Origin: Obrimoposthia wandeli
Lineage: Eukaryota
Assembly: GCA_977020255.1 (NCBI GenBank)
Contig: CDROCS010001101.1
Location: 434,001-498,000, forward strand
Length of the DNA: 64,000 nucleotides
Reading direction: 5' to 3'
Numbering within the stretch: the first letter of the stretch is position 1; every line of letters begins with the position of its first letter. The notes under the pieces were generated by a model. The model did not search any database. It was given only the letters and a program-made list of their open reading frames with translations, and was not told the origin of the DNA. Shown in pieces: positions 3,237-45,201 of this stretch. The translations under genes were made by a program, and so were the position numbers.

Positions 3237-3261
3237 CATATAACTAATTTAGCGATTTTTC

Positions 3262-30393: not shown

Positions 30394-30441
30394 TTCGGCT
30401 TAGTGTGTGCTAAGCCGAAATTGGACATGAATGGCTTAGAG
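30394..30441. repeat. GGCTTAG-family element, copy A
   Basis: TTCGGCTTAG-TGTGTG-CTAAGCCGAA, then ATTGGACATGAAT-GGCTTAGAG. Confidence 0.85.
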
Positions 30442-30493
30442 TTGAAAATTTAAATTGTACAGTTCACATTACATAAAGTATGATTAAATTGAG

Positions 30494-30630
30494 ATTAAGA
30501 CCTTGTTTAGGCATGAGCAACGCTGTCACTAAGTACCTACTTTGCACTTAATCACTAAATATCTACAAACCAAAAATGTAATATCAGATAATCCTCAAAA
30601 CGGAAGGCATAAAGTTTAAAACAGTGTAAT
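30494..30630 (-). mobile_element. Decayed Vibrio-type (VXR-like) attC site
   Basis: Minus strand CATTTTTGGTTTG...TTTAGTGATTAAG...TTAGTGACAGCGTTGCTCATGCCTAAACAAGGTCTTA resembles long Vibrionaceae attC repeats; R' core is mutated. Confidence 0.6.
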
Positions 30631-30635
30631 GCTCA

Positions 30636-30669
30636 ACAAAGCCTTCAGTCTTTACACAGAAGGCTTTGT
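30636..30669. terminator. Hairpin downstream of the DUF4041 gene
   Basis: ACAAAGCCTTC-N12-GAAGGCTTTGT. Confidence 0.6.
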
Positions 30670-30679
30670 GCTAGTGATA

Positions 30680-32140
30680 TTAGGCAGCTAACCGCTCTTG
30701 AAGACGAAGGCTTTCATAATAGTCTTCAGCTAAAGCCGTCATCTTAAACTCAACATCCATTCCATCAATATTATCAACAGCCTCTTTTATAGAGTCGAGA
30801 TCCACCTGAAAGAATTCCTTCCTAAGATTTACAGCATTAACCCTTAATGATGTAAATGTTCTATGTAGAGCAGTTTCAAGTGCAGGTGCATCCTCAGCAT
30901 ATATCATGGCATGCACATCGAATGGGAACGGCACACTTGCATCACCTAGCTCTTTGACACGATCCATCGGCTCTAAACGCCGAGTCATACCTATTTTGTA
31001 TACATCCTCTCCGAATGAGCCAATATTACTAATTACATACACATGGCCCTTTCGAGTTTGCTGAGCCATACTTTTCGCTCGATTTTCTTTAGCTTCAGCG
31101 TCGAGTAATTGCTGCTCAAGTTGAGTTATACGTAGCTCTGCAATTACCCTTTCATTTTCAGAAATTCCTGATAGCTCTTTTCGTGCCTTATCTAACAAAT
31201 CCCTATACATTTTTTCTTCTTTTTCAGCTTCAGCAACGACTCGTTCATACTCTTTAATAGCACGTTGTTCCTCTCTTATTTGCTCTTTTATTAACCTTTG
31301 CTCTGCTATTTCTTCTTGCTTCTTCAATGTATATTGATATTGGAGCTTGCACTCTTCAAATTTCAGTTCCACATAACTTATGTCGAACCCACATTCCAAT
31401 GTTGCAGCCGATTTTTCAAGAGTATTCGCAAGCTTTTCTATGCGTTCTAAAGTTCGACCGAAACTACTTGGGCTAACTTTACCTATAAGAAAATCACATT
31501 CTGTATTAAATGCTGTTAGCATCAACTTAACTTGACCGCTCAGAATCTTTTTGTTGAACGATTTGTCATTTGAAATGATTGTTGTGCCAGGGTAAGTGAC
31601 AGCCTTTTTCTCTTTAATCATTTCTTTCTGCTGAACCCTGACATCTTTAATCTCCTCAGTAAACCTAACTGAAGTTTCATAGAGATAATCAGGAATTTCA
31701 AAATGGCCACATGATGTATATTCATCCAAGCGAGAATATAAATCTAACATCCCCATTAATTCTGCCTGCTCCGCACCAAGATTGGATAAACTTAACACAA
31801 GTTTTTCTTCATCAACTTTTAACTTACAAATCGCTGAAGTATGTAATTGAACACTCTCTAATAACTGTTTTTCACTTTTCTTAAGTTCTTGTAATTCAAC
31901 AGTCTCAATTCGCACACGATCTAGTTCTTTGGTTTGAGCATTCAATTCATTTAGAGTCAACGTCAACTTTTCTTGTGCTTGAGCGAATGCTTCATCAAGA
32001 CTTTTATATGTATCGAGCTTTGTATTAACATTATTTTTGTATTCATTTAGTTTTCTATTGAAATGGCTCTTAGTGATTAAATAGCTAGCAATTATTACTG
32101 ACACTGCAACCGCTATAACGATCAGGAGGTTGTTATCCAT
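30680..32140 (-). CDS. DUF4041 + T5orf172/GIY-YIG-like domain protein with N-terminal TM and coiled coils
   Basis: GHVYVISNIGSFGEDVYKIGMTRRLEPMDRVKELGDASVPFPFDVHAMI...LETALH. Confidence 0.85.
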   Translation of the reverse strand: MDNNLLIVIAVAVSVIIASYLITKSHFNRKLNEYKNNVNTKLDTYKSLDEAFAQAQEKLTLTLNELNAQTKELDRVRIETVELQELKKSEKQLLESVQLHTSAICKLKVDEEKLVLSLSNLGAEQAELMGMLDLYSRLDEYTSCGHFEIPDYLYETSVRFTEEIKDVRVQQKEMIKEKKAVTYPGTTIISNDKSFNKKILSGQVKLMLTAFNTECDFLIGKVSPSSFGRTLERIEKLANTLEKSAATLECGFDISYVELKFEECKLQYQYTLKKQEEIAEQRLIKEQIREEQRAIKEYERVVAEAEKEEKMYRDLLDKARKELSGISENERVIAELRITQLEQQLLDAEAKENRAKSMAQQTRKGHVYVISNIGSFGEDVYKIGMTRRLEPMDRVKELGDASVPFPFDVHAMIYAEDAPALETALHRTFTSLRVNAVNLRKEFFQVDLDSIKEAVDNIDGMDVEFKMTALAEDYYESLRLQERLAA

Positions 32141-32144
32141 ATGA

Positions 32145-32492
32145 CTACCTTAGTACTGCATTAATAAATTGTTTACGTAGAGAAGCTCTTTCAGAGCACC
32201 TATCAATGTATTCTTCTTGGGCACCGATAAGTGAATCTTTGAACTGCTGCTTTACTTTAGCGATATTTATTTTTTCCGATTTTTTAGCTCGATTAGCCCT
32301 ATCTTTTTCTGCACGTATCGCATCACGCTCCATCTCTCTTAATAGCTTCTGATGTTCTCTCTCAGATTTAGCCTGCTCTCTTGCTATTGCTTTTTGCCTA
32401 CGATCACTATCTCTGGCAGCTTGCTTGCCAGCTTTATCAATGGCCTTAACAACTTTAACCGCTAACCTTAAACCGTTACCTTTTCTAGCCAA
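32145..32492 (-). CDS. Small basic coiled-coil hypothetical protein in an operon with the DUF4041 gene (probable TTG start)
   Basis: Strong RBS AAGGAGGAG before TTG at 32492; 4-bp gap to the next gene. Confidence 0.7.
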   Translation of the reverse strand: MARKGNGLRLAVKVVKAIDKAGKQAARDSDRRQKAIAREQAKSEREHQKLLREMERDAIRAEKDRANRAKKSEKINIAKVKQQFKDSLIGAQEEYIDRCSERASLRKQFINAVLR

Positions 32493-32756
32493 CGTCTCCT
32501 CCTTAATTCCTATAACTGATTCCACTATGTAAGCACACTTACCCATTCAAATTCCACGTGCTACATAGCAAAACAAAAAACATTGATAAAATGCTAATAA
32601 ACTACAACAAAATCAAAAAACTTACCCACACCCTTCGGTTTCACATATCCAAATCAAACATAACGTTGAACAAAGCGACTGAATCTTCAATTTAAATTTA
32701 AATGTGCCAGAAATGAAATAATGTCACAGATTGTAGTGCCGTACGTAAAGGCATTT

Positions 32757-32789
32757 TTGAACATAAACGGCTTAGTGCTTATGCCTCAA
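32757..32789. repeat. GGCTTAG-family element, copy D
   Basis: TTGAACATAAACGGCTTAGTGCTTATGCCTCAA; 27/33 identical to copy E. Confidence 0.75.
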
Positions 32790-32833
32790 TAAGGACGTTT
32801 TACATTACTGAAATGTATGCTCAAAAAAGAGAT

Positions 32834-32923
32834 TTCTAATTTTCAAGGTGTGAGATAATCGCCACCCAAGCTTGAATTGAGTATGCCAAACGTTGGGAGC
32901 CATTTTTCAATGCTATGTTAAAA
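32834..32923 (-). mobile_element. Internally deleted Vibrio-type attC remnant
   Basis: Begins at the SEC-C gene stop: TTTTAAC-ATAGC-ATTGAAAA...CCCAACGTTTGGCAT...CTCACACCTT; R' degenerate. Confidence 0.65.
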
Positions 32924-34036
32924 ATTTATTTTCGTAATAGCTTCAACATCCCACCCTGAAAAATCAACACCGTCGTCAACCAAGACTGTTTCTGGTTTGA
33001 ACTCAAATGGATTGACCCCAGTCATGATAAGACTTTGAATTTTATCTTTCTGAGACTTGGATAAACTGTCCCACCATGAAGGTGAAGTAAATGTATTTTC
33101 TGCAACGCCATAGAAAAAACGTACTAATTTTCCAAAAATATTTAATTGATCTCCAGCAAGCAATGTGTTGATAAAACCTTCAACAATCGCCTCACCTTTT
33201 AGCCAACTAAAGGCTGCATAGCCTTTTCCATCACTAGAAAATGAATTAAACACTAAGTACTCAGGTATAACAGAAAGGTCACCTAAATCCTGAATTAGGC
33301 TACCATCAAAATCCGAAACTGGAGCGACAATAGACGATACAGCAACAGGAATTGAACTAGATGACTCAATAACTAGATGACACATTTCATTCGTTGCTTT
33401 ACCTAACAATTGAGTATCAAGCTTATTCTTGAATTCACTTAACTCATCAATTGCAGTTTGTACACCCAGTTGGTTATCAGCCGCAAACTTTTGAATAAGG
33501 AGCTGGTCTATTGGTTGCTTGCCTTTATCTCCAATTTTTAACAACTCAGAACTAATAAGACTACCTTCTTTTGCATACAACTCTTTCGCTACCGAACGAT
33601 ACATTAAAGCAAAACACTGTTCTTCTTCATTAGCAAACGGGCGATCCTCAACGCAAGCGAATAAGGACTTATCATGAATGGAGCAAAAACCTTTAAATGT
33701 AGATGCTTGATTTACGCCTATTTTTTCGGGGATCAATTTACCTTCATGTTTGAATAAATTCGCGAGGTTTATCTTCAACCCCAGCACATGATTAGTATCA
33801 TCAGCAATTTCGATCAAGCTACCACTTTTAGATATAGTGTGTGCATTGATTATTTTTTTACTACATTCACCTTTTAGTTCGCTAGGTACATAACAACATT
33901 TCCTTTGTGCAATTTTATTTGAATGACTTATTGCTTCACCTTTTGTGATTGATTTTTCACTCTCTCGCCCATAATGACAGTGCTTGTATTTCTTTCCTGA
34001 TTTGCACCAGCACTTTTTATTTCTACCTATTTTCAT
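32918..34036 (-). CDS. SEC-C motif protein with an uncharacterised Cys/His-containing body (start reassigned to MKIGRN)
   Basis: KIGRNKKCWCKSGKKYKHCH; then CSKKIINAHTISK and FCSIHDK. Confidence 0.8.
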   Translation of the reverse strand: MKIGRNKKCWCKSGKKYKHCHYGRESEKSITKGEAISHSNKIAQRKCCYVPSELKGECSKKIINAHTISKSGSLIEIADDTNHVLGLKINLANLFKHEGKLIPEKIGVNQASTFKGFCSIHDKSLFACVEDRPFANEEEQCFALMYRSVAKELYAKEGSLISSELLKIGDKGKQPIDQLLIQKFAADNQLGVQTAIDELSEFKNKLDTQLLGKATNEMCHLVIESSSSIPVAVSSIVAPVSDFDGSLIQDLGDLSVIPEYLVFNSFSSDGKGYAAFSWLKGEAIVEGFINTLLAGDQLNIFGKLVRFFYGVAENTFTSPSWWDSLSKSQKDKIQSLIMTGVNPFEFKPETVLVDDGVDFSGWDVEAITKINF

Positions 34037-34074
34037 GATACAGCACCTACATCTTAAGAGTGAACTCAACAAAT

Positions 34075-34117
34075 TTATAACGTATTTATCTCGCGTCAAT
34101 TAGAGCGTTTGTTATTT
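34075..34117 (-). mobile_element. Truncated short attC-like site
   Basis: AAATAAC-AAACG-CTCTAATT...GTTATAA, 38 bp before the SEC-C start codon. Confidence 0.5.
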
Positions 34118-34292
34118 GAACAATATGGGTTGTGACCTTCGCAGGGTGATCCAGACACCCCATACTAAACCAACCTTCTTCAGGCTTTGCATTGTCAGGA
34201 TGCGTGCGTAGCGAGTGCCAGTATGGCTTGTCCTTGACAATATGAATTCTGATGAAACAATGACCAAATTGGCGTATTCTAATTGACGCCAA
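34086..34292 (-). pseudogene. 68-codon ORF, possibly a truncated cassette gene
   Basis: GC-richer than its flanks, ends inside the attC-like site, no RBS recognised. Confidence 0.3.
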
Positions 34293-34548
34293 GTTGGCTT
34301 TCTAGTTGTCGTCTTATACGTATTTACCTAATTCCATATAATACCTAAAAATCACCATAATTAAATGACTACATAATTAATTATTGTTTAATAACAATTT
34401 AATACAGTGACTTATAGAGATTCGTATAAATAATCATGAAATACATATGTAACCTATAGATGAACAGCTTACCTAAATCTCTATTTACAAATAAAGTCAA
34501 TATAGGTCTGTTAAAGTTACTAAATATTTATCAATAGCACTCATAAGT

Positions 34549-34645
34549 AAATGTATGGAAAATCGATATGAGAATATTGTGAATGAGTGATCGCTCTAAG
34601 TAAGAAAGGGGCAAATTCGGTTTAGCGCTATTGCACTAAGCCGAA
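34549..34645. repeat. GGCTTAG-family element, long form, copy B
   Basis: 44/52 ungapped identity to copy C over the left part; hairpin TTCGGTTTAG...CTAAGCCGAA. Confidence 0.9.
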
Positions 34646-34695
34646 CATTACTCTGTTACCTTTACCCAACTTATATGCCACATACTTATTCCTTA

Positions 34696-34720
34696 ATATA
34701 ACGCCCTTTTATGCTTATAT
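34696..34720 (-). mobile_element. Collapsed attC-like remnant
   Basis: ATATAAG-CATAAAAGGGC-GTTATAT at the DUF4238-like gene stop; only the R boxes remain. Confidence 0.4.
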
Positions 34721-35821
34721 TACGACCAACTGTGGTTCACTTGGGCTATAGTGAACATCTTTGTTTTTTTCCTGATGCTTTAAGTAACTCTCAACGTCTT
34801 TAAGTTCATATGGAGTATAAATTGTATTGGTATGGCCTATATTCCCCATACTAATACAACTACTAATATTATCCATATAGTCGTGAGATACTCTAAATAT
34901 ATTTATCTTATCGGAACTTCTTACTTTCATCTTCTCAGGTACCACACTAAACACATCTAAGGTAGAGTTATAATATTCATGTTTACCAATAGAAAAACTT
35001 ATGGCTAAGTTATGAGCTAACGGTAAAAAATTTAAGTTGTTGTTGGTGTTGATAATAAAAATGCTCGGACAAATTGTAAAAACAGGTCTAAGTTCGGTGC
35101 TGTGAAAATCATAACCTGTATGATAAATACCTGTAATATAGAATTTATTAAACATTGTATTTCTTAAACGGCCGAGATAACTAAACAGAGATGGTAAATA
35201 TTTAGCTTCCGCTAGCATTGATAGAGTAAATAGTGCTCTACACTTATCGTAAACTTCGGTCGAAGAATTAACTACTTTAACCATCTTTTTAAATAAAGGT
35301 TCTTCGAAATGCTTTTTAACATTATCCGGTGGGTTTAGAATTGAATTCTTAATATTACCGAAATTTTCAACCATATCTTCGAGCATCGGCGGTAAAATGT
35401 CATCCTTACCTTCCATTTTATTCTGTGGATTATTTAGCCCTAAGATCATCTGTATAACCATGAAGTTTTGCATAATTTCTAATGCACATGGTTTGCCTTC
35501 TAGATTTAATAGGTTTTCGAACTTGTGATCATGAACTAATTCATTAAATAAAATAGAAGTACCTCTTTCATAATCAGATAGCTCACTCTCAATATCAAAA
35601 GGTTTGCCACTTATTGAACAGATTAACTTAAAACAATCTTTACTTATTGCTACAGAAGATATTGGAAGTGGAATTTCTTTTATGTCATTTTTATCTTCAG
35701 AATGATAAACGGTATGGCACCATACTCTTTGCTTATCTTTGTTGTGAGCAGCTGTGTCATCACTTCTAAAGTTTCTTAATACCCATTGAGATAAAACATG
35801 TTGATTTTTAGTATATTTCAT
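34715..35821 (-). CDS. DUF4238-like protein (start reassigned to MKYTKNQH)
   Basis: N-terminal KNQHVLSQWVLRNF resembles the DUF4238 HxVP/SxxxLxxF motif; RBS-like AAGAGGTG. Confidence 0.65.
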   Translation of the reverse strand: MKYTKNQHVLSQWVLRNFRSDDTAAHNKDKQRVWCHTVYHSEDKNDIKEIPLPISSVAISKDCFKLICSISGKPFDIESELSDYERGTSILFNELVHDHKFENLLNLEGKPCALEIMQNFMVIQMILGLNNPQNKMEGKDDILPPMLEDMVENFGNIKNSILNPPDNVKKHFEEPLFKKMVKVVNSSTEVYDKCRALFTLSMLAEAKYLPSLFSYLGRLRNTMFNKFYITGIYHTGYDFHSTELRPVFTICPSIFIINTNNNLNFLPLAHNLAISFSIGKHEYYNSTLDVFSVVPEKMKVRSSDKINIFRVSHDYMDNISSCISMGNIGHTNTIYTPYELKDVESYLKHQEKNKDVHYSPSEPQLVVI

Positions 35822-35839
35822 AACACCTCTTGGAGATAA

Positions 35840-35952
35840 GCATAACGCCGTAAACAACTTCGCATAAATTTTTCAATGTTTTTACTGACTTTGTTTTTAG
35901 CAAAAAACTGCGATAAGCTACACACCCTATTGATTTTAAATGTCATTATTGT
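35840..35952 (-). mobile_element. Decayed attC-like site
   Basis: Ends in GGC-GTTATGC about 20 bp before the next ATG; begins at the previous stop; internal T/A-run symmetry; R'' degenerate. Confidence 0.45.
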
Positions 35953-35954
35953 AT

Positions 35955-36359
35955 TTAACCACGACTCTTTACGTCGACATTCTTAGTATTTTCTTGGTGA
36001 GTAAGTGTTGATGTAATAAAACTCTTAATATCCGAAGAGTAGACGCCACCGAGTAACGCAAGACAACCTAGCAAAGTATATTTGCAAGCTTCCAAAATCA
36101 AAGGTTTAACAAGCCATTCTTTGGCCGATTTGTTACCGTAAGAGTTATCTATATTACTCAATTTTAGCTTACTAAAATTGAGTAATTCTTTACCCTTTTT
36201 CGTCAATGAAAGGTTCTTATAGAAAACTTCCCCATCAACTACTTCCTCTTCACCATAAACATGGCCTTTTTCAACAGCATCCCAAATTGAGCCTTCATAA
36301 GACATTCGATGTGCTCTTTTTAGGGACCCGTTATCTATCTCGTCTAGATATTTAAACAT
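35955..36359 (-). CDS. Hypothetical cassette-like protein with one TM segment
   Basis: 134-aa AT-rich ORF between two attC-like sites. Confidence 0.7.
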   Translation of the reverse strand: MFKYLDEIDNGSLKRAHRMSYEGSIWDAVEKGHVYGEEEVVDGEVFYKNLSLTKKGKELLNFSKLKLSNIDNSYGNKSAKEWLVKPLILEACKYTLLGCLALLGGVYSSDIKSFITSTLTHQENTKNVDVKSRG

Positions 36360-36361
36360 GG

Positions 36362-36457
36362 GTCACTCAACTTAAACGGACAAAAATTGTTGGTTATAAC
36401 GCGGAACCAATCTGAAATTAACTAGCTGTTTTTATTATATTTAAAGCGCTTATTATA
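36362..36457 (-). mobile_element. Decayed attC site (about 95 bp)
   Basis: Minus strand TTATAAT-AAGC-GCTTTAAA...AAAAACAGCTAGTTA...TAACCAACAATTTTTGTCCG-TTTAAGT; L''/L' pair with one extra base; most mismatches become G.T pairs on the bottom strand. Confidence 0.65.
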
Positions 36458-37076
36458 AAGATGGCACACCAATGGCTTCCCGCAAATTATTAGTTAGCTC
36501 ACGTTTTATCAGAGGAACTGTCTTAGCTAATTCACTAGCCTCTTTTTTCTTTTCGAAGATTTCTTCAACTTGCCCCTCGACGAAATACCCTGTATTCGCG
36601 AGCCTATTCTCTGCACTACGATGTCCATCAAAACTCCAAAATGCATCGTTTAATAAAACACCGATCAATGAGTCGATATTTTCTGGTACCAGTATTTGAT
36701 TTCTTTCATAATACGAACGTAACTCTCGATAGGCGGTTTCAAAGCGTTCATAAATTGGAGAGTTTCCTGTTGCATAGTTAATAGCATTAAACAGCTCTCT
36801 GTCTACATCAACTATTTTTGTATAGAGTTCAACTAATACCTCTGATTGACGCTCGTACACACCAGCAACCTTGACTCGATAACGCAGGTTTTCATTTTCT
36901 AGGTTTTCTTTATGGTTATGTAAATCAGTATCAAGCCTATTTTTTAGCTTTAATTCATATTCTTTTTGCTTCGATTTAAACCAACTATCAATAAGGTACT
37001 TTGATAGATAAGTCATGACACCTAGAACTGATGCCGGAGCCATGATTAATACAAGAATTGCTTCAAATTTTTCCAA
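36453..37076 (-). CDS. Hypothetical protein with N-terminal TM and coiled coil (TTG start)
   Basis: 207-aa ORF whose stop overlaps an attC-like site. Confidence 0.7.
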   Translation of the reverse strand: MEKFEAILVLIMAPASVLGVMTYLSKYLIDSWFKSKQKEYELKLKNRLDTDLHNHKENLENENLRYRVKVAGVYERQSEVLVELYTKIVDVDRELFNAINYATGNSPIYERFETAYRELRSYYERNQILVPENIDSLIGVLLNDAFWSFDGHRSAENRLANTGYFVEGQVEEIFEKKKEASELAKTVPLIKRELTNNLREAIGVPSL

Positions 37077-37410
37077 TTTCGACTCTATCTCAAAAGTTTT
37101 AAAACATTTGTATAACAGGACTCTCGATTTCCCAAATTAATTCACCTCAATAAAAGTAGATTAATTACATGCTTATAGGAAAATGAACCGTCCTGTAAAG
37201 TATTTATTTAGTCTTATAATTTATATACAAGGCTAGCTATGTAATTGAGTATATTGACATTAATTCTAGGCTACAAGATAAACCTGACTACCTTTTAACA
37301 AATTGAGACTGCGTTCACCGAAATACCAATAACACTGTATAAAATCAGCCTATCTAGTCTTTTTCATTACACATAAGTAGGATTAACTTAGTTGGTAAAT
37401 TTTACATGAT

Positions 37411-37505
37411 AAAATGTATGGTAAATCGACATGAACATATTGTGAGTGAGTAACAGCTCTAAGCCAAAAGGGGGGCAAGTTCAGCTTAGAGTTAGTGGCT
37501 AAGCC
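37411..37505. repeat. GGCTTAG-family element, long form, copy C
   Basis: AAATGTATGG...CTCTAAGCC-AAAAGGGGGGCAAG-TTCAGCTTAG-N9-CTAAGCC. Confidence 0.9.
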
Positions 37506-37871: not shown

Positions 37872-38194
37872 ATAATTACCTTTGATGATGTTATTACAAT
37901 TTTTACACTACTATTTTTGAATATCTTGAGGTTTACATCATCATCTTCGTCTTTCTTAATCCTTTTCATAAGTCTGATTACTAGAACGTTGGTTGATAAT
38001 ATGGTCTTTTAAATCTCGATATACACCGAAATAAGATAATGATTAATATTATAAATATTTATAATTTCAAAAGTATATCGTTTGGGGTTTAATTATTCTA
38101 AACGAAATATTCCTCTTAAGTTTTATCCCGCACATTATTTAAACTGAGTCGCAATATCGTTCGTGTGGGCAGTTTTGAGTTAGCTCGGCTAGCT

Positions 38195-38215
38195 AGATTG
38201 AGATTGAGATTGAGA
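38195..38215. repeat. Short tandem repeat (AGATTG)x3
   Basis: Read directly from the sequence. Confidence 0.85.
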
Positions 38216-38318
38216 CTAACACTGGCATCATTTGTTATTCGGCCCTTCAATTAGGTGACCACTACCACTACAAAAATATAGAGAAATAAGTATTACGATA
38301 ATACATATAATAATCTTT

Positions 38319-39227
38319 TTACTTATCCCAATAACCTGCACCGTCACCTAACTTATGGCTAATGAACTCTATGAATACTCTTACTTTTTCAGGAAGGTGT
38401 TTTCTCTCTGGATAAACGGCATATATTGCATGTTTTGGTAGAGTATATTCATCCATAAATGTAATTAATCTTTGAGATTTCAAGTGCTCTGCAACGATAA
38501 AGGTTGGCATTTGGCAAATACCTAATCCATTCAATAATACCTCAGAGATAGCATCACTATTATTCACGATAAAATTGCCTTTAGGCTCTAGTTTTAGCTT
38601 TTTATTGTCTTTGTAAAAAGTCCATTCCGCTCCGCCCTGAAATAGACTGTAATTTATGCAATTGTGATGAGATAAATCTTCTGGGTTTGATGGTGTTCCG
38701 TGTTTTTCAAGGTATTCAGGCGATGCACAGAGTACACTTTTACAATCAACAAGTTTTTTGGCAATCAACGAAGAATTTTCAAGTTCACCAATACGGATCC
38801 CGACATCATAACCGCCCTCAACTAAGCTTACGACTCGATCATCCATACTCAAGATAACCTTCACATCAGGGTACAAATCTAAGAACTCCTTTATGTAAGG
38901 CACGATATGTAATCGTGTAAAAGTCATCGGAGCATTTATTTTTAAGGTGCCTTTAGGTATGCCTTGCAGATTATGCAACGCAGCAAAACCTTCGCTTGCA
39001 ATAGCGACAGCATTCCTAGCATAATCCGAAAATCGTTCGCCCGCTTCAGTTAGCACCAGGCTTCTGGTCGTACGATTAAATAATCGCACGCCTAGATTAT
39101 CTTCTAAAACCGATATCCTTTTACTTACCGCTGATTTTGTCATACCCAATTTTTCCGCTGCTGACGAGAAGCTACCCCTTTCTACTACAGCAACAAACAC
39201 TGGTATTGCCGAAAAATTATCTTTCAT
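38319..39227 (-). CDS. LysR-family regulator (CrgA-like)
   Basis: GSFSSAAEKLGMTKSAVSKRISVLE, LFNRTTRSL. Confidence 0.93.
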   Translation of the reverse strand: MKDNFSAIPVFVAVVERGSFSSAAEKLGMTKSAVSKRISVLEDNLGVRLFNRTTRSLVLTEAGERFSDYARNAVAIASEGFAALHNLQGIPKGTLKINAPMTFTRLHIVPYIKEFLDLYPDVKVILSMDDRVVSLVEGGYDVGIRIGELENSSLIAKKLVDCKSVLCASPEYLEKHGTPSNPEDLSHHNCINYSLFQGGAEWTFYKDNKKLKLEPKGNFIVNNSDAISEVLLNGLGICQMPTFIVAEHLKSQRLITFMDEYTLPKHAIYAVYPERKHLPEKVRVFIEFISHKLGDGAGYWDK

Positions 39228-39322
39228 ATTGTCAACTTTTACTCACCAATGAATATCTAAACTAGATATTATCATTTCTTTGGTAACCAATTAAAGTACT
39301 CCCAAACAATGGAGAGTAAAAA

Positions 39323-39784
39323 ATGAAAAATATAAACAGATATTCGATATTGGCTATTGTCGGAGGGGGCTTATTGGCTCTAATGATTAATATCAATAGC
39401 CAACTCGCGTTAGAAACATCCGCAATCAACGCATCATGGATTGCACATGGCCTAGGGAGTCTACTGGCATTCGGACTTTATCATGTGGTTAAGAAAACTG
39501 TCGGGTCACCACCTTCATCAATGAAAGGTGATATACCTAAATTATACTACTTAGGTGGATTACCTGGCGCATTTACCGTCATTCTCGCTTCCGTAACTGT
39601 TAATAGCGTTATCGGCTTATCAGGAACACTAGCATTGGGATTAATTGGACAATTAGTCTGCTCTATTCTTTGTGAGGCATTGGGACTATTCGGACTAGAA
39701 AAAAGGACATTCACTCTTATTGAACTACTGCCTATCTCCTTGGTTATTTTCGGTTCAATACTCATTATTTCACTGAGGTATTAA
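39323..39784 (+). CDS. DMT-superfamily transporter subunit (YdcZ/DUF606-like)
   Basis: Five hydrophobic segments, YLGGLPGAF; divergent from LysR. Confidence 0.8.
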   Translation: MKNINRYSILAIVGGGLLALMININSQLALETSAINASWIAHGLGSLLAFGLYHVVKKTVGSPPSSMKGDIPKLYYLGGLPGAFTVILASVTVNSVIGLSGTLALGLIGQLVCSILCEALGLFGLEKRTFTLIELLPISLVIFGSILIISLRY

Positions 39785-39785
39785 A

Positions 39786-40229
39786 ATGACATTTTATATT
39801 CTAATAGCATTATTAAATGGATTTTGTATCGCGATAAGTCGCATATTGAACGGACAACTAGCCAGCTATTGTGGTGCATTTAAGGCTTCATATGTAAATC
39901 ATATAATAGGTTTTGTGTTCCTTTCAATTGTCATGATTTTATTACTTGAACCTCCACAACTTTCAAATGGTTCAAACATGTGGGTTTATCTCGGTGGCTT
40001 TATCGGCGCTTTTTATGTGGCCATTAATAGTCTTGTCATGAGTCATCTGGGTTCGACGAATACAATGGTTTTGGTTATTGGAGGGCAAATGTGCTTCGGA
40101 TTACTTTTGGATTCATCGACAAATTCACTCAGCGAATTATTCATCAAAGTACTGGGTGTTATGTCTATCGTCATAGGGGTATATTTAAAACAAGCCATAC
40201 AACACAAGCGCACACGTCTTTCGTCTTAA
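39786..40229 (+). CDS. DMT-superfamily transporter subunit (YdcZ/DUF606-like)
   Basis: YLGGFIGA, GQMCFGLLLD; paired with the preceding paralogue. Confidence 0.8.
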   Translation: MTFYILIALLNGFCIAISRILNGQLASYCGAFKASYVNHIIGFVFLSIVMILLLEPPQLSNGSNMWVYLGGFIGAFYVAINSLVMSHLGSTNTMVLVIGGQMCFGLLLDSSTNSLSELFIKVLGVMSIVIGVYLKQAIQHKRTRLSS

Positions 40230-40311
40230 TTTGAGGGTAGTATTTTATAATAAAAGCCACTTATACCTGATAAAGCTAGGTTACCGATTTACTCGTGGAA
40301 TGTCCCATCAC

Positions 40312-40418
40312 AAAATATATGGTAAACCAATATGAGCAAACGTGAGTAAGTCGGAACTCTAACAAGCTTTGGGTAAAATTCAACTTAGCCTTTAACTTAT
40401 GACCAAAAGACTAAGTTG
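40312..40418. repeat. GGCTTAG-family element, long form, diverged copy F
   Basis: 38/52 identity to the left part of copy C; hairpin arms changed to CAACTTAG/CTAAGTTG. Confidence 0.7.
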
Positions 40419-40450
40419 TTAGATCTTAATTTTATTATTCTAATCTAGCT

Positions 40451-41212
40451 TTACTTCACCGCTACGATGGTTTGAAAGCCGCCACTATTACTTGATTCTT
40501 CAATGCTAAAACCAACCACTGCAAGTTGCTCCTCTACCCACTCGGCAGAGAGTCTGATCTTACGGTAGCAACTTTTATTAAGTACCCATGAATTCTGTTT
40601 TTTGATGTAAACAATGTCATGTATCTTAACGGTTTCAGGCTCGTATTCTAAGAAACAGGTAAAGATGATGTTCTCATCACTTCTCACCGGAATAAACCGT
40701 TCTGTGTCTTTAAGTTCAGCAGATAAGTCACGAAAAGTAAGAATTAACTTCCCCCCCGTTTCAAGCGAACTGAATGAATCCTGGAATATAGTTAAAGCAT
40801 CCTGCTTCGATTTTAGATGCGTGATGGTATCTGTCATACAGACAATCAATTCACACGGACTACTGAGATGATCCTTGAAATTTAAAATATCATCATTGAT
40901 AGTCGTAATAGATTTATTTGTTGCAATAGATGGCATAGTCACAAGAGACTGAGCTGTCGCATTAGCCCTTAATTCATCCAACAGTTTTTGACTAAGATCT
41001 ATCGCAGTGACATTAAAACCGAGTTCAGCCAAAGGGATTGATTGAAAGCCAGAACCTGCACCTAAATCCAGCGCAATACCCGAGGATGAGGGTGCAATGT
41101 GTCTATTTTTAAAGAAGGCTAAATTACTATTTTTTGCTTCATCGAATCCCCCCATTAACCATGTATACACATCAGATAATAAGCTTTCATAATGCTCTTC
41201 AACACTCACCAT
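40451..41212 (-). CDS. Class I SAM-dependent methyltransferase
   Basis: ALDLGAGSG motif I, VTAIDLS. Confidence 0.88.
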   Translation of the reverse strand: MVSVEEHYESLLSDVYTWLMGGFDEAKNSNLAFFKNRHIAPSSSGIALDLGAGSGFQSIPLAELGFNVTAIDLSQKLLDELRANATAQSLVTMPSIATNKSITTINDDILNFKDHLSSPCELIVCMTDTITHLKSKQDALTIFQDSFSSLETGGKLILTFRDLSAELKDTERFIPVRSDENIIFTCFLEYEPETVKIHDIVYIKKQNSWVLNKSCYRKIRLSAEWVEEQLAVVGFSIEESSNSGGFQTIVAVK

Positions 41213-41374
41213 TGGTACTGCTCCTGCAGGTAATAACTAACACTCCTAAATAGGTAGTTAACATTACAATACATTGCCTGTAATTAGTAGAGTTACTTAA
41301 GCTGAATATATTCATGATAATGTCACCATTAATGCGTTACTATCCATTCAGGCATAGATAAAAACTGAAATATT

Positions 41375-43075
41375 ATGATGAAAAAGAATAAGCCAGTTAA
41401 AATAACACTGGCGCATATAAATGATACGCACTCTTACTTTGAACCTCAGTCACTGCAGTTACAGCTGAACATTGACGGTAAAATAATATCGCCTTATGTC
41501 AGCAATGGCGGTTTCTCTCGTATCGCCACGCGCGCTAAACAGCTTAAAGCGAGCGCGCTACAGAACAACCGTGACTTTATATTTGTCCACGCTGGCGATT
41601 GCTTTCAAGGCACGCTGTATTTCTCGCTGTTCAAAGGGAAAGCCAATTCCGATATGCTTAACGCATTAGGCATTGATGTCATGACCATTGGTAATCATGA
41701 ACTCGATATGGGTAATGAGCCAGTGGCTGAATTTTTAGATCGTATTGAGTTTCCACTACTCGCTGGTAACTGGGATCTGACTAACGAATTAACAACCAAG
41801 TCGCATTATTTAAAGGGTCGCCCTAACTTACTCTCTTATCAACCAGAGCAGCAGACTGCTCGTTGGATGACACGCGTTGTCGATGGCGAGTCTGTGGCAA
41901 TATTCGGAGTGTCACTGGATAAGATGGCCGATATAGCCAATGTCGATCCAGATACGCCATTTGTTAATGCCATTGAAACGGCTATAAATACTGTGCGCGC
42001 TATTCGAGAGTCAGGGATTAATAAGATCATATTATTAAGTCACCTTGGTTTTACTGGTGATTGTGAACTAGCAGAGAAAGTGGATGGCATCAGCTTGATT
42101 GTCGGTGGTCATAGTCACAACCTGCTAGGGGATTTCAGCGACTTAGGACTGAAAAAAGAAGCTGAATACGGACATCAAGTTAATGGTACTTATATCGTGC
42201 AAGCAGGATTCCATTCACAGGCGCTTGGTCACTGTGAAATTGATTTCGCCGCCGATGGTTCAGTTAGTACTTTCAAAGGCAAAAATGAACTGCTAATTGG
42301 TCGCCGACTCTGTACGAATGCAAGCCTGCTAACAACCAATGACGATGCAATTCATGCACAGGCTAGCCTGTACCTCATGCAACATGAAAACGTGGTGATA
42401 TGTAAAAAAGATCCACAACTACAAAGTTTGCTACAGGATAAGTACATACCACGAGTGCGCGAACTGCAAAGTACAGTGATCGCTAACTTAACAAAAGATA
42501 TGCGTCACATCCGCATTCCCGATCAACAAGGTGGCAGTGAGATAGTCCCGTTAGTAGCCGAATCGTTTGCCCATATGATGAATAAAGACGGGCATCAAAT
42601 AGACTTTGCCATTCATAATGCCGGTGGTGTAAGAACGTCGCTATTCCAAGGTAATATTTCAATTTGTGATATCGCAGGCAAGCTACTGCCCTTTGCCGTT
42701 CCTATCGGTGTTTATCACATCAAAGGCAAATATATAGCACAGGCACTCGAAGGCGCGATCAACAACGCAACCAATAATGGCGTAATAGGCACAGGTTCGG
42801 GCAGCTACCCTTATACATATAACTTGGATTTTAACTATCACGCGCAGCGCCCTCTTGGTCAACGTATTACTGGACTCATGATTAATACTGCGCAAGATGG
42901 CTGGGTGGATATTGACGATGACAAGCATTATTACGGCAGCTCTTCCGCTTATACCATGAAAGGTAAGGAAGGTTATGAAGCACTGACGATGATGGAAGGT
43001 GACGGGATTGTGAGCCACCATTCTATGGCAGATTGCTTCATTGATTTTCTTCAAAATGTGCCGAACAGGCTATAA
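41375..43075 (+). CDS. Bifunctional metallophosphoesterase/5'-nucleotidase (UshA-like), no signal peptide
   Basis: NDTHS, GDCFQG, GNHE, GGHSH, NAGGVR. Confidence 0.88.
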   Translation: MMKKNKPVKITLAHINDTHSYFEPQSLQLQLNIDGKIISPYVSNGGFSRIATRAKQLKASALQNNRDFIFVHAGDCFQGTLYFSLFKGKANSDMLNALGIDVMTIGNHELDMGNEPVAEFLDRIEFPLLAGNWDLTNELTTKSHYLKGRPNLLSYQPEQQTARWMTRVVDGESVAIFGVSLDKMADIANVDPDTPFVNAIETAINTVRAIRESGINKIILLSHLGFTGDCELAEKVDGISLIVGGHSHNLLGDFSDLGLKKEAEYGHQVNGTYIVQAGFHSQALGHCEIDFAADGSVSTFKGKNELLIGRRLCTNASLLTTNDDAIHAQASLYLMQHENVVICKKDPQLQSLLQDKYIPRVRELQSTVIANLTKDMRHIRIPDQQGGSEIVPLVAESFAHMMNKDGHQIDFAIHNAGGVRTSLFQGNISICDIAGKLLPFAVPIGVYHIKGKYIAQALEGAINNATNNGVIGTGSGSYPYTYNLDFNYHAQRPLGQRITGLMINTAQDGWVDIDDDKHYYGSSSAYTMKGKEGYEALTMMEGDGIVSHHSMADCFIDFLQNVPNRL

Positions 43076-43178
43076 ATCAGTAACACATAAAACGATATAG
43101 TAATAACAAATAAGGCAGCCACGATATCTTCGTTGGCTGCCTTTATAATGTTAACACTTGGCTATTTTTCAAGTGTTT

Positions 43179-43991
43179 TTATTTAGCAAGCTCTGCGGCT
43201 GTATCAACAAAGATACCTTGAATATCTTTTGCTTCACGCTCAGTCTGCCCACCATGTTTTAGGAACGCGCCAATAATAGCTGCCGTTTTATTTTCTTTGG
43301 CGCGGTCCAAGAAGTAACGTAATTCCAATTCAGCCCCGGCATTTTCATCGACAATCGACGCTGCAATAATTTCCTTGTACATCACTATGTCGCGAATTTC
43401 TAACTGACTGATAACACCAGTAACTTGTGCTAAGAAATCGGCCATTTCTGCTTTCGGCACATACTGAGTAATGATGTTCAATGCCTCAGCTTGTTGCGCA
43501 GTAAAATCATTCCCTAACAACAGTGCCTGCAATGCTTTACCTTTACCGAGTCTTCTCGCAAATTGCACTGCACCTTGACCACCAGTAGGAATGTTCACAT
43601 GTACCTCTGGCTGTGCAAATGCTGAGTTTTCAGTACCGTAAGCAAGGTCACAAGCCATTACAAATTCATTACCGCCGCCACGTGCCACACCGTCTACAGC
43701 GGCAATCGAAAGTTGTTTCATCGCTTTGATATTTGTGATCATATGATTAAACTCGATAGAGGCAGCCTGTCCACCTTGAGTTCCGTTGATCACGTTCAAA
43801 TCTAAATGCGCTAGAAAGAATGTTTCGTGAAGAGATTTAAACACCACGATTTTAGTTTCTCGATCATCTTTTAACGATAAAACAAAGGCATTAACTTCAT
43901 TGATAAGATCTATCGTTAACACGTTTACAGGTGGGTTATTGATAGTAACGGTTGCAATGCCATTGTTGTGAATGATTGATAATTTGTTCAT
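43179..43991 (-). CDS. Enoyl-CoA hydratase/isomerase-family protein
   Basis: NNPPVNVL, GGGNEFVMACD, PEV. Confidence 0.9.
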   Translation of the reverse strand: MNKLSIIHNNGIATVTINNPPVNVLTIDLINEVNAFVLSLKDDRETKIVVFKSLHETFFLAHLDLNVINGTQGGQAASIEFNHMITNIKAMKQLSIAAVDGVARGGGNEFVMACDLAYGTENSAFAQPEVHVNIPTGGQGAVQFARRLGKGKALQALLLGNDFTAQQAEALNIITQYVPKAEMADFLAQVTGVISQLEIRDIVMYKEIIAASIVDENAGAELELRYFLDRAKENKTAAIIGAFLKHGGQTEREAKDIQGIFVDTAAELAK

Positions 43992-44125
43992 GGGTATTCC
44001 TCATTTATCTAAACGGGCTGTATTCGCTGCAGCCCTTCATGTGTTGCTACTATAATATTGTTGTTAGCGAAGAAAAATGCTTAAATAAGCACATCATTGG
44101 TGCCAAAAATGCAACAAAGGAATAT

Positions 44126-45076
44126 ATGGACTTATCTAGCCAATTATTACTGTTACTTGAAGTGGTCGAACTTGGTTCATTTACTAAAGTGGCCGATCAA
44201 AGAAATGTCGACAGATCGGTGATATCGAAACAGATAACCCGTTTAGAGCTCGACCTTGATGTACGTTTACTCAATCGGACCACACGCTCGCTCTCTTTAA
44301 CCGCACCGGGCAATGAAATGGTCAAGCAAGCCAAATTATTACGTACTCTGCTAAATGATACCCACAGACTAGCGCAAAATTATCATGCCGAGCCCAGAGG
44401 CGTATTGCGGATCACCAGTTCGACTTTGTTTGGTCGCCAGTATGTGCAACAAGCCGTATCCGTGTTTCAACAAAAGTACCCTGAGGTTAATGTTGAATTA
44501 CGCTTAGAAGATCGCTTTATCGATATGGTAAGTGAGGGCTTTGATATTGGTTTTCGTATCGGAAAACCGAAAAACTCGAATCTCATCACCCGTAAAATAG
44601 CCCGCAACAGATTACTGATTGTCGCCTCGCCAGCGTTCATTAAACAACACGGTAAGATTGACACTATTGCACAGTTAGAAACCTTACCCGCTGCGGTCTA
44701 CGCTGCCCCTGGATTGTTAATTGACAAATTTACCTACCTCGATGCCAATAAAGAACCTAAGAATTTACAATTGAATGTCGCTTACAAAGTAAATGATGTA
44801 GAAATGGTGGTTAAAACGGCGGTATCAGGGAATATGCTCGCTGTAGCAACAGCGCAGATGATAGAAAATGAAGTTATCGAGGGTAAACTAATCCCCATAA
44901 TGACAGACCTTAATCTCGATGATTTTGGTACTTTTTATGCCGTATATCCCCACAGAGATGCACCAATAAAAACGAAATTGTTCATTGACACACTTAAAGT
45001 TATCGTAGGTGAAGATGTGCCAGTATGGGAGCAGAATATTCCTGATTTTGAACACATGTATGGTCGTAAAAAATAG
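44126..45076 (+). CDS. LysR-family regulator (start reassigned to MDLSSQL)
   Basis: GSFTKVA...SVISKQITRLE, LLNRTTRSL; RBS AAAGGAA. Confidence 0.9.
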   Translation: MDLSSQLLLLLEVVELGSFTKVADQRNVDRSVISKQITRLELDLDVRLLNRTTRSLSLTAPGNEMVKQAKLLRTLLNDTHRLAQNYHAEPRGVLRITSSTLFGRQYVQQAVSVFQQKYPEVNVELRLEDRFIDMVSEGFDIGFRIGKPKNSNLITRKIARNRLLIVASPAFIKQHGKIDTIAQLETLPAAVYAAPGLLIDKFTYLDANKEPKNLQLNVAYKVNDVEMVVKTAVSGNMLAVATAQMIENEVIEGKLIPIMTDLNLDDFGTFYAVYPHRDAPIKTKLFIDTLKVIVGEDVPVWEQNIPDFEHMYGRKK

Positions 45077-45156
45077 CGGCATTAGCTGGGTATTAAAGAC
45101 AGTATAAAAATGAGATTCGCGCCAGCATAAAACAGGATGATTATGTAGCTGACATG

Positions 45157-45201
45157 CACTAAGCCAATGTTGAACATGGTGGCTTAGTGTTTATGCGTCA
45201 A
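45157..45201. repeat. GGCTTAG-family element, copy E
   Basis: CACTAAGCCA-ATGTTGAACATGG-TGGCTTAGTG (perfect 10-bp arms), followed by TTTATGCGTCAA. Confidence 0.8.

What the first reader, a model, noticed from the sequence alone, without database searches (positions are those of the whole stretch)
30394..45201. Unexplained six-copy GGCTTAG/CTAAGCC element family with recombination-site-like architecture
Seen: six non-coding copies. B (34549), C (37411) and F (40312) are about 100-bp direct repeats (B/C 44/52 and C/F 38/52 identical over the left part), spaced 2863 and 2901 bp apart. A (30394), D (32757) and E (45157) carry the right-hand core in the opposite orientation (D/E 27/33). The fullest copies consist of an inverted pair of arms around a short spacer (A: 10-6-10, TTCGGCTTAG-N6-CTAAGCCGAA) plus a third arm 16-17 bp away. 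Established: an inverted core plus accessory direct repeats is how tyrosine-recombinase sites such as integron attI and the Tn4430 TnpI site are organised. Inference: these could be scars or targets of an undescribed site-specific mobilisation system acting in trans, since no recombinase is encoded in this window. An operator family or structured RNA is also possible.
Basis: partly seen in the sequence, partly recalled or inferred. Interest (0 to 1): 0.82.

Follow-up and report, generated by a model that had tools for sequence, protein, structure and literature searches.

The report
Repeat marking integron-like cassette junctions
The six "GGCTTAG" copies belong to a roughly 200-base hairpin-forming repeat found in every Moritella-family genome searched; it sits at the joints between swappable gene blocks and most likely acts as an unusual integron-type recombination site, which would make it a variant of a known system and not a new one.

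Summary
The six copies are real and far beyond chance. However, all six point the same way: the "opposite orientation" of A, D and E is an artefact of the element's palindromy.

The full element is about 200 bp:
- a left module;
- an outer arm, CTCTAA(G/C);
- a conserved GGGGCAAA spacer;
- the inner hairpin GGCTTAG-loop-CTAAGCC;
- a conserved TGGACA spacer;
- an outer arm, (C/G)TTAGAG;
- a right module.

The window comes from a Moritella-like bacterium, on a contig of a 1.35 Gb mixed assembly. A covariance model finds at least 13 copies in that assembly and 1-15 in each of 13/13 Moritellaceae genomes. It finds one copy in 138 other genomes of the order.

Copies lie about 100 nt 3' of genes, often in co-oriented arrays with different cargo in each genome. 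Three observations tie them to integron-type cassette arrays that lack an integrase (CALIN-like):
- homology between genomes repeatedly breaks just after CTCTAA;
- the right module ends at a TAAC core, followed by attC-like DNA;
- one of those stretches is 90% identical to the qnrVC6 cassette attC.

The palindrome is not a canonical attC. It was not found in the 20 kb searched beside IntI in four genomes, and it occurs in IntI-less genomes. Best reading (about 0.45): a lineage-specific, non-canonical attC-like junction module or gene-less cassette.

The parts
30340..30499 (+). Copy A. Degenerate left module; outer-left arm CTGTAAC 30373-30379; inner hairpin 30394-30419 (10-6-10); outer-right arm GGCTTAGAG 30433-30441; right module ending GAGATTAAG at 30491-30499.
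   Evidence: R1 83.8 bits, E 7e-18; ssDNA fold z -5.0; also reads as a terminator on the - strand.
30496..30545 (+). Decayed attC-like stretch abutting A's right module. It resembles the first 45 nt of the qnrVC6-type attC, but its core reads TAAG instead of TAAC.
   Evidence: alignment; (nhmmer E 0.85, weak).
32745..32836 (+). Copy D. Right half only: spacer TTGAACAT 32757-32764, outer-right arm GGCTTAG 32769-32775, and the right module.
   Evidence: 27/33 identical to E. R1 does not detect it.
32845..32920 (+). VCR-like attC of the cassette that ends with the SEC-C gene (32918-34099, - strand). It belongs to the same family as six attC sites beside IntI in a Moritella genome and as the qnrVC6 cassette attC.
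   Evidence: (nhmmer E 1e-8 to 2e-8).
34549..34672 (+). Copy B. Left module 34549-34592; outer-left arm CTCTAAG 34594-34600; inner hairpin 34616-34645; outer-right arm decayed (CTGTTACC).
   Evidence: 77.5 bits; z -1.3.
37103..37463 (+). Non-coding module of about 360 nt to the left of copy C. It includes C's left module and CTCTAA. It is conserved at 75-95% in three other Moritellaceae genomes whose genes on both sides differ.
   Evidence: no conserved ORF.
37411..37535 (+). Copy C. Left module; outer-left arm CTCTAAG 37457-37463; inner hairpin 37482-37505; outer-right arm of the other class (CTTGTTAGCG), so the element is chimeric.
   Evidence: 74.9 bits; z -0.15.
40312..40424 (+). Copy F. 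Left module; CTCTAAC 40357-40363; inner hairpin AACTTAG-22 nt-CTAAGTT 40382-40417; GTTAGAT 40418-40424 directly after it (spacer lost).
   Evidence: R1 12 bits, weak; passes a crude attC-shape filter.
45152..45247 (+). Copy E. Right half only: CACTAAGCCA 45157-45166, 13-nt spacer, TGGCTTAGTG 45180-45189, then the right module ending GAGAGTAAC (TAAC at 45244-45247), 19 nt before the stop of the Imm51 gene.
   Evidence: 15.3 bits; z -5.0.
30680..45631 (-). Variable cargo between the copies: T5orf172/DUF4041 (30680-32140), SEC-C (32918-34099), DUF4238-like (34715-35857), two unknowns, a LysR gene with ydcZ pair, a methyltransferase (40451-41212), Imm51 (45266-45631). Five of the six copies lie 3' of a - strand gene in this list; C follows the 88-aa zinc-ribbon ORF at 37605-37871, which is not in the list.
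   Evidence: None of these genes is shared with the syntenic locus of genome G009.

Best explanation
The GGCTTAG elements are the junction modules of integrase-less, integron-type gene-cassette arrays (CALIN-like), plus solo relics of such arrays, in a Moritella-like bacterium.

Read in the direction of the genes, each module:
- begins exactly at the crossover core of a preceding attC (G|TTA...);
- runs through a 60-100 nt non-coding right module;
- then forms a nested palindrome of about 80 nt, CTCTAA(C/G) ... GGCTTAG-loop-CTAAGCC ... (G/C)TTAGAG.

In the three clearest of the informative comparisons the flanks change between genomes at the palindrome's distal box. That is the position where integron cassettes are joined.

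The most likely mechanism is that the palindrome folds out of one DNA strand as a non-canonical attC-like site, effectively the attC of a gene-less mini-cassette. It would then be recombined in trans by an integron integrase. Many copies, including B, C, D, E and F here, have since decayed.

Shown here: anatomy, distribution, array context, adjacency to attC, breakpoint positions.
Inferred: folding in vivo, the acting enzyme, and whether the elements are still active.
For: 1. Arrays. Co-oriented gene(s)+element units occur in at least 6 loci of 5 genomes and in metagenome contigs, some with single-ORF units of 735 and 1120 bp. In 39 of 57 copies the neighbour on the right is a gene on the opposite strand, at a median of 105 nt from its stop.

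2. Variable cargo. The G000 and G009 loci share their flanks but none of the genes between the elements. A metallo-beta-lactamase-fold cassette flanked by elements is shared at 89% identity by G009 and G001, in different surroundings.

3. Breakpoints. In three independent groups, left-flank homology ends immediately after CTCTAA. Right-flank homology starts at or near it in the MFS group.

4. Link to attC. In at least 6 copies the class-1 right module ends ...GAGAT|TAAC followed by diverse attC-like DNA at a fixed +44 nt. L084:1633-1680 is about 90% identical to the attC of the qnrVC6 cassette in class 1 integrons on 55 plasmids. D is followed by a full attC of the family that lies beside IntI in G004.

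5. Arm sequences. Outer arms read CTCTAAC (15 copies, plus variants) and GTTAG.. in about half of the copies. This is the integron inverse-core/core type.

6. Pairing. The inner stem is paired in 95% of cells, with compensatory variants GAGTTAG/CTAACTC and GAGTCAG/CTGACTC. The whole structure exceeds all 500 shuffles and all slid controls. Intact copies fold at z -3.5 to -5.

7. No strand bias. G-U and A-C mismatches number 64 and 69. This gives no sign that the structure forms in an RNA read from one particular strand.

8. Enzyme available. IntI scoring above the curated cut-off is present in 6 of 13 Moritellaceae genomes and on 4 contigs of this assembly.

9. Precedent. CALINs, and cassettes inserted away from att sites, are documented (PMC4889954; bioRxiv 10.1101/2022.09.11.507474).
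Against: - No R1 match in 80 kb directly beside IntI in four genomes, even with filters off. In the five complete genomes with IntI, the elements lie 180 kb or more from intI.
- Elements occur in all 13 genomes, whereas IntI occurs in 6, and copy number shows no positive link to IntI.
- The palindrome is not a canonical attC. About half of the arms read AAG/CTT where attC sites have the conserved AAC/GTT. The two stems are separated by 14-17 nt conserved unpaired stretches on each side, where an attC has a short central spacer. The G/C pair next to the crossover does not covary (27 matched, 20 mismatched).
- A conserved left module of about 55 nt continues beyond the putative crossover in more than half of the copies. 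Integron cassettes do not show this.
- Units have 250-400 nt leaders and sometimes several genes in both orientations.
- Not all breakpoints coincide. One lies in the inner loop (L113/L140) and one to the right of the element (A/L110).
- Many copies are solo, between ordinary genes such as oppC, an MFS transporter and a lipase chaperone.
Confidence: 0.45

Rival explanations
1. A REP/ERIC-like intergenic repeat: a host-maintained or MITE-like hairpin element. It would be transcribed within 3' untranslated regions, where it affects termination, mRNA stability or insulation. The mosaic flanks would come from homologous recombination between dispersed copies, not from a site-specific enzyme.
For: - Low-copy, dispersed and intergenic; 3' of genes with a moderate orientation bias (39:18); many solo copies between ordinary genes.
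- Present in all 13 genomes regardless of any recombinase family tested.
- The central sequence, including the unpaired stretches and the loop, is strongly conserved across species.
- Linkage along the element is only local, i.e. the copies are mosaics.
- Breakpoints are not all at one position.
- Copy A qualifies as an intrinsic terminator on the gene strand.
Against: - It does not explain why the right module stops exactly at a TAAC core followed by attC-like DNA at a fixed distance.
- It does not explain why three independent homology breaks fall right after CTCTAA.
- Only 1 of the 6 window copies passes the terminator scan.
- No G-U over A-C excess on either strand.
- No Rfam match.
- No target-site duplications or sharp termini were seen on the left side.
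Confidence: 0.25
2. Recombination sites of a cassette system distinct from integrons. The whole element of about 200 bp would be a large site with a core near CTCTAA| and accessory arms on both sides, like attP or cer/psi. It would be used by a trans-acting recombinase conserved in all Moritellaceae (for example XerC/XerD or an unrecognised enzyme), so that tandem integration rebuilds a full hybrid site at every junction.
For: - Conserved sequence lies on both sides of the mapped breakpoint, as expected for a site with a central crossover. An attC does not show this.
- Elements are present in IntI-less genomes and were never found in IntI-proximal arrays.
- There are four 7-bp arms in alternating orientation, with conserved 14-17 bp spacers.
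- The inner-left arm is tandemly duplicated in 5 copies.
Against: - No recombinase gene lies next to any array or solo copy examined.
- Y1 transposases occur in 2 of 13 genomes and IS110 in 5 of 13, none of them co-located with the element.
- The dif-like match in the left module is no better than chance matches elsewhere in the window.
- The variable inner loop (6-22 nt, up to 47 with duplications) argues against a double-stranded core with fixed spacing.
- Physical linkage to bona fide attC cores points to the integron system.
Confidence: 0.15
3. A family of paralogous small-RNA genes or operator sites. The left module would carry a promoter or operator (the conserved TATGGnAAAT and the ATATGA..CATAT inverted repeat) and the nested hairpins would be the RNA body or protein-binding sites.
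For: - The left module has conserved promoter-like and palindromic motifs.
- The unpaired stretches GGGGCAAA and TGGACA are conserved.
- A non-coding leader of about 360 nt is conserved across species next to copy C.
Against: - No Rfam match even at E<=5.
- No U-tract after the hairpin on the + strand.
- The promoter scan finds no more sites than in shuffled sequence.
- No strand-specific G-U signal.
- No RNA runs are available.
- Partial copies (D, E; G001_e1) lack the left module altogether.
Confidence: 0.1

Closest known systems
Integron attC sites in clusters lacking an integrase (CALIN), and single scattered attC sites (Cury et al. 2016, PMC4889954; Loot et al., bioRxiv 10.1101/2022.09.11.507474)
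   Same: - Imperfect palindrome of about 80 nt after each gene unit.
- Co-oriented arrays spaced less than 4 kb apart, with no integrase nearby.
- Outer boxes CTCTAAC/GTTAGAG in half of the copies.
- Junctions at the distal box.
- Direct adjacency to genuine attC cores.
- Solo copies elsewhere in the genome.
   Different: - AAG/CTT in place of AAC/GTT in about half of the copies.
- Conserved unpaired stretches of 14-17 nt between the two stems, where an attC has a short spacer.
- A conserved module of about 55 nt beyond the crossover.
- Long leaders and multi-gene units.
- Not found in the 20 kb searched beside IntI.
Species-specific attC families of sedentary chromosomal integrons, such as the Vibrio cholerae repeats (from my own knowledge)
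   Same: A lineage-restricted repeat, highly conserved in sequence, that punctuates arrays of accessory genes, defence genes and genes of unknown function.
   Different: - Those repeats lie in one large array next to intI, and their paired R and L boxes are close together.
- The GGCTTAG family is scattered over several small arrays and solo sites.
- A different attC family (qnrVC6-like) occupies the IntI-proximal array in Moritella.
ERIC/IRU, REP/BIME and Correia-type intergenic repeats (from my own knowledge)
   Same: Hairpin-forming repeats of 100-200 bp, 3' of genes, genus- or family-specific, with partial and mosaic copies.
   Different: - Copy number is far lower (1-15 per genome).
- The copies cluster in co-oriented arrays with variable cargo.
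- The right end coincides with an attC core.
- No RAYT/Y1 transposase is present in 11 of 13 genomes.
Complex tyrosine-recombinase sites with accessory arms (lambda attP, cer/psi, integron attI, the Tn4430 TnpI site).
   Same: A core with inverted arms plus extra repeats, and conserved DNA on both sides of the mapped junction.
   Different: - No cognate recombinase is adjacent.
- The loop or spacer of the inner pair varies from 6 to 22 nt, which suits a folded strand better than a duplex core.
- The dif-like similarity is not significant.

Membership tests
Integron attC site | Inverse core R'' (..AAC) and core R' (GTT..) at the two ends of an imperfect palindrome | tested here: inconclusive
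   Left arm: CTCTAAC in 15 copies against CTCTAAG in 14. Right arm: GTTAG.. in about 11 copies against CTTAG.. in about 18. The feature is met in roughly half of the copies. In the window only F has both boxes.
Integron attC site | Length within the known attC range and folding of a single strand | tested here: met
   The span from box to box is 68-106 nt. Intact copies fold as ssDNA at z -3.5 to -5, with 0 of 200 shuffles as stable. B, C and F do not fold better than shuffles.
Integron attC site | L box close to the R box across a short unpaired central spacer, with extra-helical bases (Fig. 2 of PMC4889954) | tested here: not met
   The second stem lies 14-17 nt from the outer stem on both sides, and these stretches are conserved and unpaired. 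No consistent bulged bases were seen.
Integron attC site | Cassette junction (crossover) in the box distal to the gene | tested here: inconclusive
   Three groups break right after CTCTAA. One breaks 8-10 nt further in, one in the inner loop, and one to the right of the element.
Integron attC site | Recognised by IntegronFinder's attC covariance model and recombined by IntI | not testable with these tools
CALIN (cluster of attC sites lacking an integron integrase) | At least two sites on one strand less than 4 kb apart with no intI nearby (PMC4889954) | tested here: met
   If the elements count as attC-like: A, D, B, C and F lie 2.4, 1.8, 2.9 and 2.9 kb apart on one strand. There is one bona fide attC at 32845-32920. 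No IntI is present in the window.
REP/BIME with RAYT, or IS200/IS605 ends | Co-occurrence with a Y1 (HUH) transposase | tested here: not met
   PF01797 is present in 2 of 13 Moritellaceae genomes, while the element is in 13 of 13.
IS110/IS1111 element or its non-coding RNA | Adjacent DEDD transposase | tested here: not met
   PF01548 is present in 5 of 13 genomes and is never next to an R1 match; the nearest is 4.4 kb away and is a fragment.
XerC/XerD site (dif, IMEX, pdif module) | 11-6-11 site matching the dif consensus | tested here: not met
   The best match in the left module is 14 of 22 arm positions, no better than unrelated places in the window. No match of 19/28 or better exists anywhere in the window.
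Intrinsic terminator | G+C-rich stem, short loop, U-tract | tested here: not met
   Only copy A passes, on the - strand. The number of terminator-like sites in the region equals that in shuffles.
Any Rfam family | Match at the gathering score | tested here: not met
   No match in the window at the gathering score, and nothing at the six copies at E<=5.
MITE | Terminal inverted repeats, target-site duplication, presence/absence polymorphism with sharp ends | tested here: inconclusive
   The right end is sharp (TAAC). The left end fades over about 55-190 nt and differs between subfamilies. No duplication was seen. No empty orthologous site could be examined.

The most novel reading that the evidence does not exclude
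The elements are the sites of a cassette-shuffling system that does not depend on the integron integrase. In this reading a folded four-arm site of about 200 bp, present in every Moritellaceae genome, has its crossover next to CTCTAA and conserved arms on both sides. It would be used by a host-wide or still unrecognised recombinase, and it has intermingled with true integron cassettes.
Probability: 0.13. Interest if true: 0.8.

Novelty: new variant of a known kind. Interest (0 to 1): 0.45.

Why it matters
Integrase-less cassette clusters are common, but how they arise and whether they are still mobile is open. Here a single, easily recognised repeat marks the joints of such clusters across a whole bacterial family, including genomes without an integron integrase. 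Its shape departs from the textbook attC in three ways: two stems far apart, conserved unpaired stretches, and AAG/CTT cores.

- If an integron integrase recombines it, the range of substrates that integron searches should look for becomes wider.
- If it does not, the family points to another way of assembling gene arrays.

The qnrVC6 link also places a clinically spread resistance cassette's attC in the same family as the repeats of a Moritella chromosomal integron.

Tried and rejected
- **Rfam.** Searches at the gathering score and at E<=5 gave nothing at the copies. There are no tRNA or tmRNA genes.
- **Canonical terminator.** Only copy A qualifies.
- **dif/XerCD site in the left module.** The similarity is not above chance. 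A resemblance to Ter (Tus-binding) sites, checked by eye, is poor; it was pursued only because tus lies at 47382-48248.
- **Canonical attC beside IntI.** There are no R1 matches in four IntI-proximal 20-kb stretches, even with filters off.
- **HUH (Y1) and IS110 transposases.** Neither co-occurs with the element.
- **Adjacent recombinases.** None among 50 proteins scanned. IntI tblastn on 43 metagenome contigs and on the window was negative.
- **Phage carriage.** No exact core match in viral contigs.
- **Expression.** No RNA runs hold this DNA.
- **Small ORFs.** The element's left part has a 6-codon ORF in B and C that is not kept in F. The 360-nt leader has no conserved ORF.
- **Crude attC-shape scan of the whole window.** Too unspecific to be useful.
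- **Replichore-linked orientation.** Suggestive in five complete genomes, but it cannot be separated from gene-strand bias, so it was not pursued.

Full report
**Observation**

The motif GGCTTAG/CTAAGCC occurs 11 times in the window against 4.75 expected. None of 100 shuffles reaches 11, and nine of the eleven lie at the six named places.

- A is TTCGGCTTAG-TGTGTG-CTAAGCCGAA with a third arm 13 nt further on.
- B, C and F share a left part of about 50 nt (about 43-44/52 and 38/52 identical), with starts 2862 and 2901 bp apart. D and E share 27 of 33 positions.

What does not hold is the orientation. A full copy on another contig of the same assembly (L003/L084) shows two nested stems: outer CTCTAAGC/GCTTAGAG and inner TTCGGTTAGCG/CGCTAAACCG. 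All four arms carry the same 7-mer in alternating orientation. Aligned in the + orientation, E and D match the right half of A and of L084 (inner-right arm, spacer, outer-right arm, right module), so all six copies point the same way.

**Anatomy**

From 59 copies the element is about 200 bp. It consists of:
- a left module (..ACATnAnnAAATnTATGGnAAATCGATATGAnnATATTGTGAnTGAGTAA..);
- the outer-left arm CTCTAA(G/C);
- a conserved unpaired stretch GGGGCAAAT;
- the inner hairpin GGCTTAG-CGTTATTGCA-CTAAGCC;
- a conserved stretch ..CTGGACA..;
- the outer-right arm (C/G)TTAGAG;
- one of at least two right modules of 60-100 nt.

The inner stem is paired in 95% of cells and has compensatory variants (GAGTTAG/CTAACTC, GAGTCAG/CTGACTC). 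The whole structure exceeds all 500 shuffles and every slid control.

Intact copies fold as single strands at z -3.5 to -5. B, C and F do not fold better than shuffles, so they are decayed.

G-U and A-C mismatches are equally frequent, 64 against 69. There is thus no sign that one particular strand is read as RNA.

**Source and distribution**

The window is part of contig C1101 of a 1.35 Gb, 6912-contig assembly. Its AspA is 91% identical to that of Moritella sp. JT01. A tus gene lies at 47382-48248.

A covariance model, R1, gives these counts:
- at least 13 copies on many contigs of the assembly;
- 1-15 copies in each of 13/13 Moritellaceae genomes;
- one match in 138 other genomes of the order;
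- about 25 further copies on marine metagenome contigs.

Nothing matches in Rfam, in viral contigs or, for the core of the element, in plasmids.

**Context**

In 39 of 57 copies the neighbour on the element's right is a gene on the opposite strand, ending a median of 105 nt away. All six window copies follow this rule.

Copies often form co-oriented arrays of gene(s)+element. Some have single-ORF units of 735 and 1120 bp.

Cargo differs between genomes. The window and genome G009 share flanking genes (three ~940-aa paralogues, dcuA-aspA, a 5'-nucleotidase) but none of the genes between the elements.

Cargo genes are varied: T5orf172/DUF4041, SEC-C, DUF4238-like, Imm51, methyltransferase, metallo-beta-lactamase fold, a MoxR-vWA system, MFS transporters, dehydrogenases, GGDEF/EAL proteins.

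No recombinase lies beside any array or solo copy examined (the same calls).

**Junctions**

All-against-all comparison of the flanks and alignments gave the following.
- In three independent groups (C/L131/L101/L132; L121/L141/L115; L089/L142) the left flank and left module are shared up to CTCTAA, and similarity drops immediately after it.
- In a group of seven copies that share an MFS gene on the right, homology begins at or near that box.
- One cassette with a metallo-beta-lactamase-fold gene, flanked by elements, is shared at 89% identity by two species in different surroundings.
- There are exceptions. One break lies in the inner loop (L113/L140). One lies to the right of the element (A and its orthologue in G004, which share aspA, its leader and the whole palindrome).
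- Linkage between variable columns is only local, and the G/C pair next to CTCTAA does not covary (27 matched, 20 mismatched). The copies are therefore mosaics.

**Link to integrons**

A blastn search of a full copy against plasmids hit 55 records over 48 nt at about 90% identity. The matched stretch lies just beyond the element's right module. In the plasmids it is the attC of the qnrVC6 cassette, inside class 1 integrons.

A profile built from it finds six sites beside IntI in Moritella genome G004. In the window it finds a full site at 32845-32920, directly right of D.

In at least six copies the class-1 right module ends ...GAGAT|TAAC, followed by diverse attC-like DNA starting at a fixed +44 nt. 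A and E keep decayed versions of this.

Read in gene direction, the element therefore begins exactly at the crossover core of a preceding attC. About half of the outer arms read CTCTAAC...GTTAGAG.

IntI scoring above the curated cut-off is present in 6 of 13 Moritellaceae genomes and on four contigs of this assembly.

Earlier notes of this scan had read the same stretch as a decayed, integrase-less cassette array with attC remnants next to the GGCTTAG elements. My tests agree with that.

**Why it is not simply an attC**

- The stems are 14-17 nt apart, with conserved unpaired sequence between them.
- Half of the cores read AAG/CTT.
- A conserved left module continues beyond the putative crossover.
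- Units have long leaders.
- No R1 match lies in 80 kb beside IntI in four genomes.
- The elements occur in the seven IntI-less genomes as well.
- Y1 and IS110 transposases do not co-occur with it either.
- A dif-like match in the left module is no better than chance.

**Verdict**

The copies are real and belong to a lineage-specific repeat that marks the joints of integron-type cassette arrays and their relics. The most likely mechanism, at about 0.45, is a non-canonical attC-like site, or gene-less mini-cassette, recombined in trans by an integron integrase. Most of the window copies are now decayed.

The rivals are:
- a REP/ERIC-like structured repeat reshuffled by homologous recombination (0.25);
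- a separate recombination system with a large two-armed site (0.15);
- a small-RNA or operator family (0.1).

The known frame (CALIN, attC families of chromosomal integrons; PMC4889954) covers most of what is seen. The architecture is the new part.

Noticed in passing
L084:1633-1680 (G000:C5369); L158 (G004) 284-405, 2129-2248, 3168-3289, 7946-8047, 8509-8628, 16551-16652: The attC of the qnrVC6 quinolone-resistance cassette, carried by class 1 integrons on 55 Pseudomonas, Vibrio, Aeromonas, Shewanella and Acinetobacter plasmids, belongs to the same repeat family as the attC sites beside IntI in a Moritella chromosome. It is 90% identical over 48 nt to a site in this assembly.
   Followed up: partly
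window 37103-37463: A non-coding stretch of about 360 nt is conserved at 75-95% in four Moritellaceae species, although the genes on both sides differ. It has no conserved ORF and no Rfam match. Its left end has an attC-shaped inverted repeat (TATAACAGGAC...GTCCTGTAAAG). It may be a gene-less cassette or an unknown RNA.
   Followed up: partly
L140:2143-2266, L141:9810-9914, L131:1501-1606, L133:1501-1602, L114:1501-1603: In five copies the inner-left arm plus half of the loop (GGCTTAG and 7-9 further nt) is tandemly duplicated or triplicated inside the hairpin. This rearrangement recurs and has no explanation so far.
   Followed up: no
whole assembly G000: The 1.35 Gb, 6912-contig assembly holds several bacterial genomes. 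Four integron integrases above the cut-off lie on different contigs (C253, C5466, C2866 with an internal TAG, and C666). Two copies of the same MFS gene+element locus, 93% identical, lie on C5562 and C506.
   Followed up: no
window 47382-48248: A tus gene (Ter protein, Pfam E 9e-44) places the window near the replication terminus. GC skew is negative across the whole window. In five complete Moritellaceae genomes the elements lie in the middle third of the chromosome coordinates.
   Followed up: partly
window 30680-32140, 32918-34099, 34715-35857, 45266-45631: The cargo between the copies looks like defence or immunity genes: T5orf172/DUF4041, a SEC-C-motif protein, a DUF4238-like protein, and an orphan Imm51 immunity protein with no toxin gene next to it.
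   Followed up: no
G010:C1:2021842-2026102 and G013:C1:1149353-1166660: IS110-family transposase genes lie inside the cassette arrays next to IntI in two Moritellaceae genomes, as expected for the attC-targeting IS1111 group. The IntI of G010 carries an internal TGA.
   Followed up: no
window 26995-29992 compared with L135 9401-12405: The dcuA-aspA pair sits on opposite sides of the cassette array and the 5'-nucleotidase gene in this genome and in G009, so the block has moved relative to the array. It has ordinary terminators and no element downstream of dcuA.
   Followed up: partly
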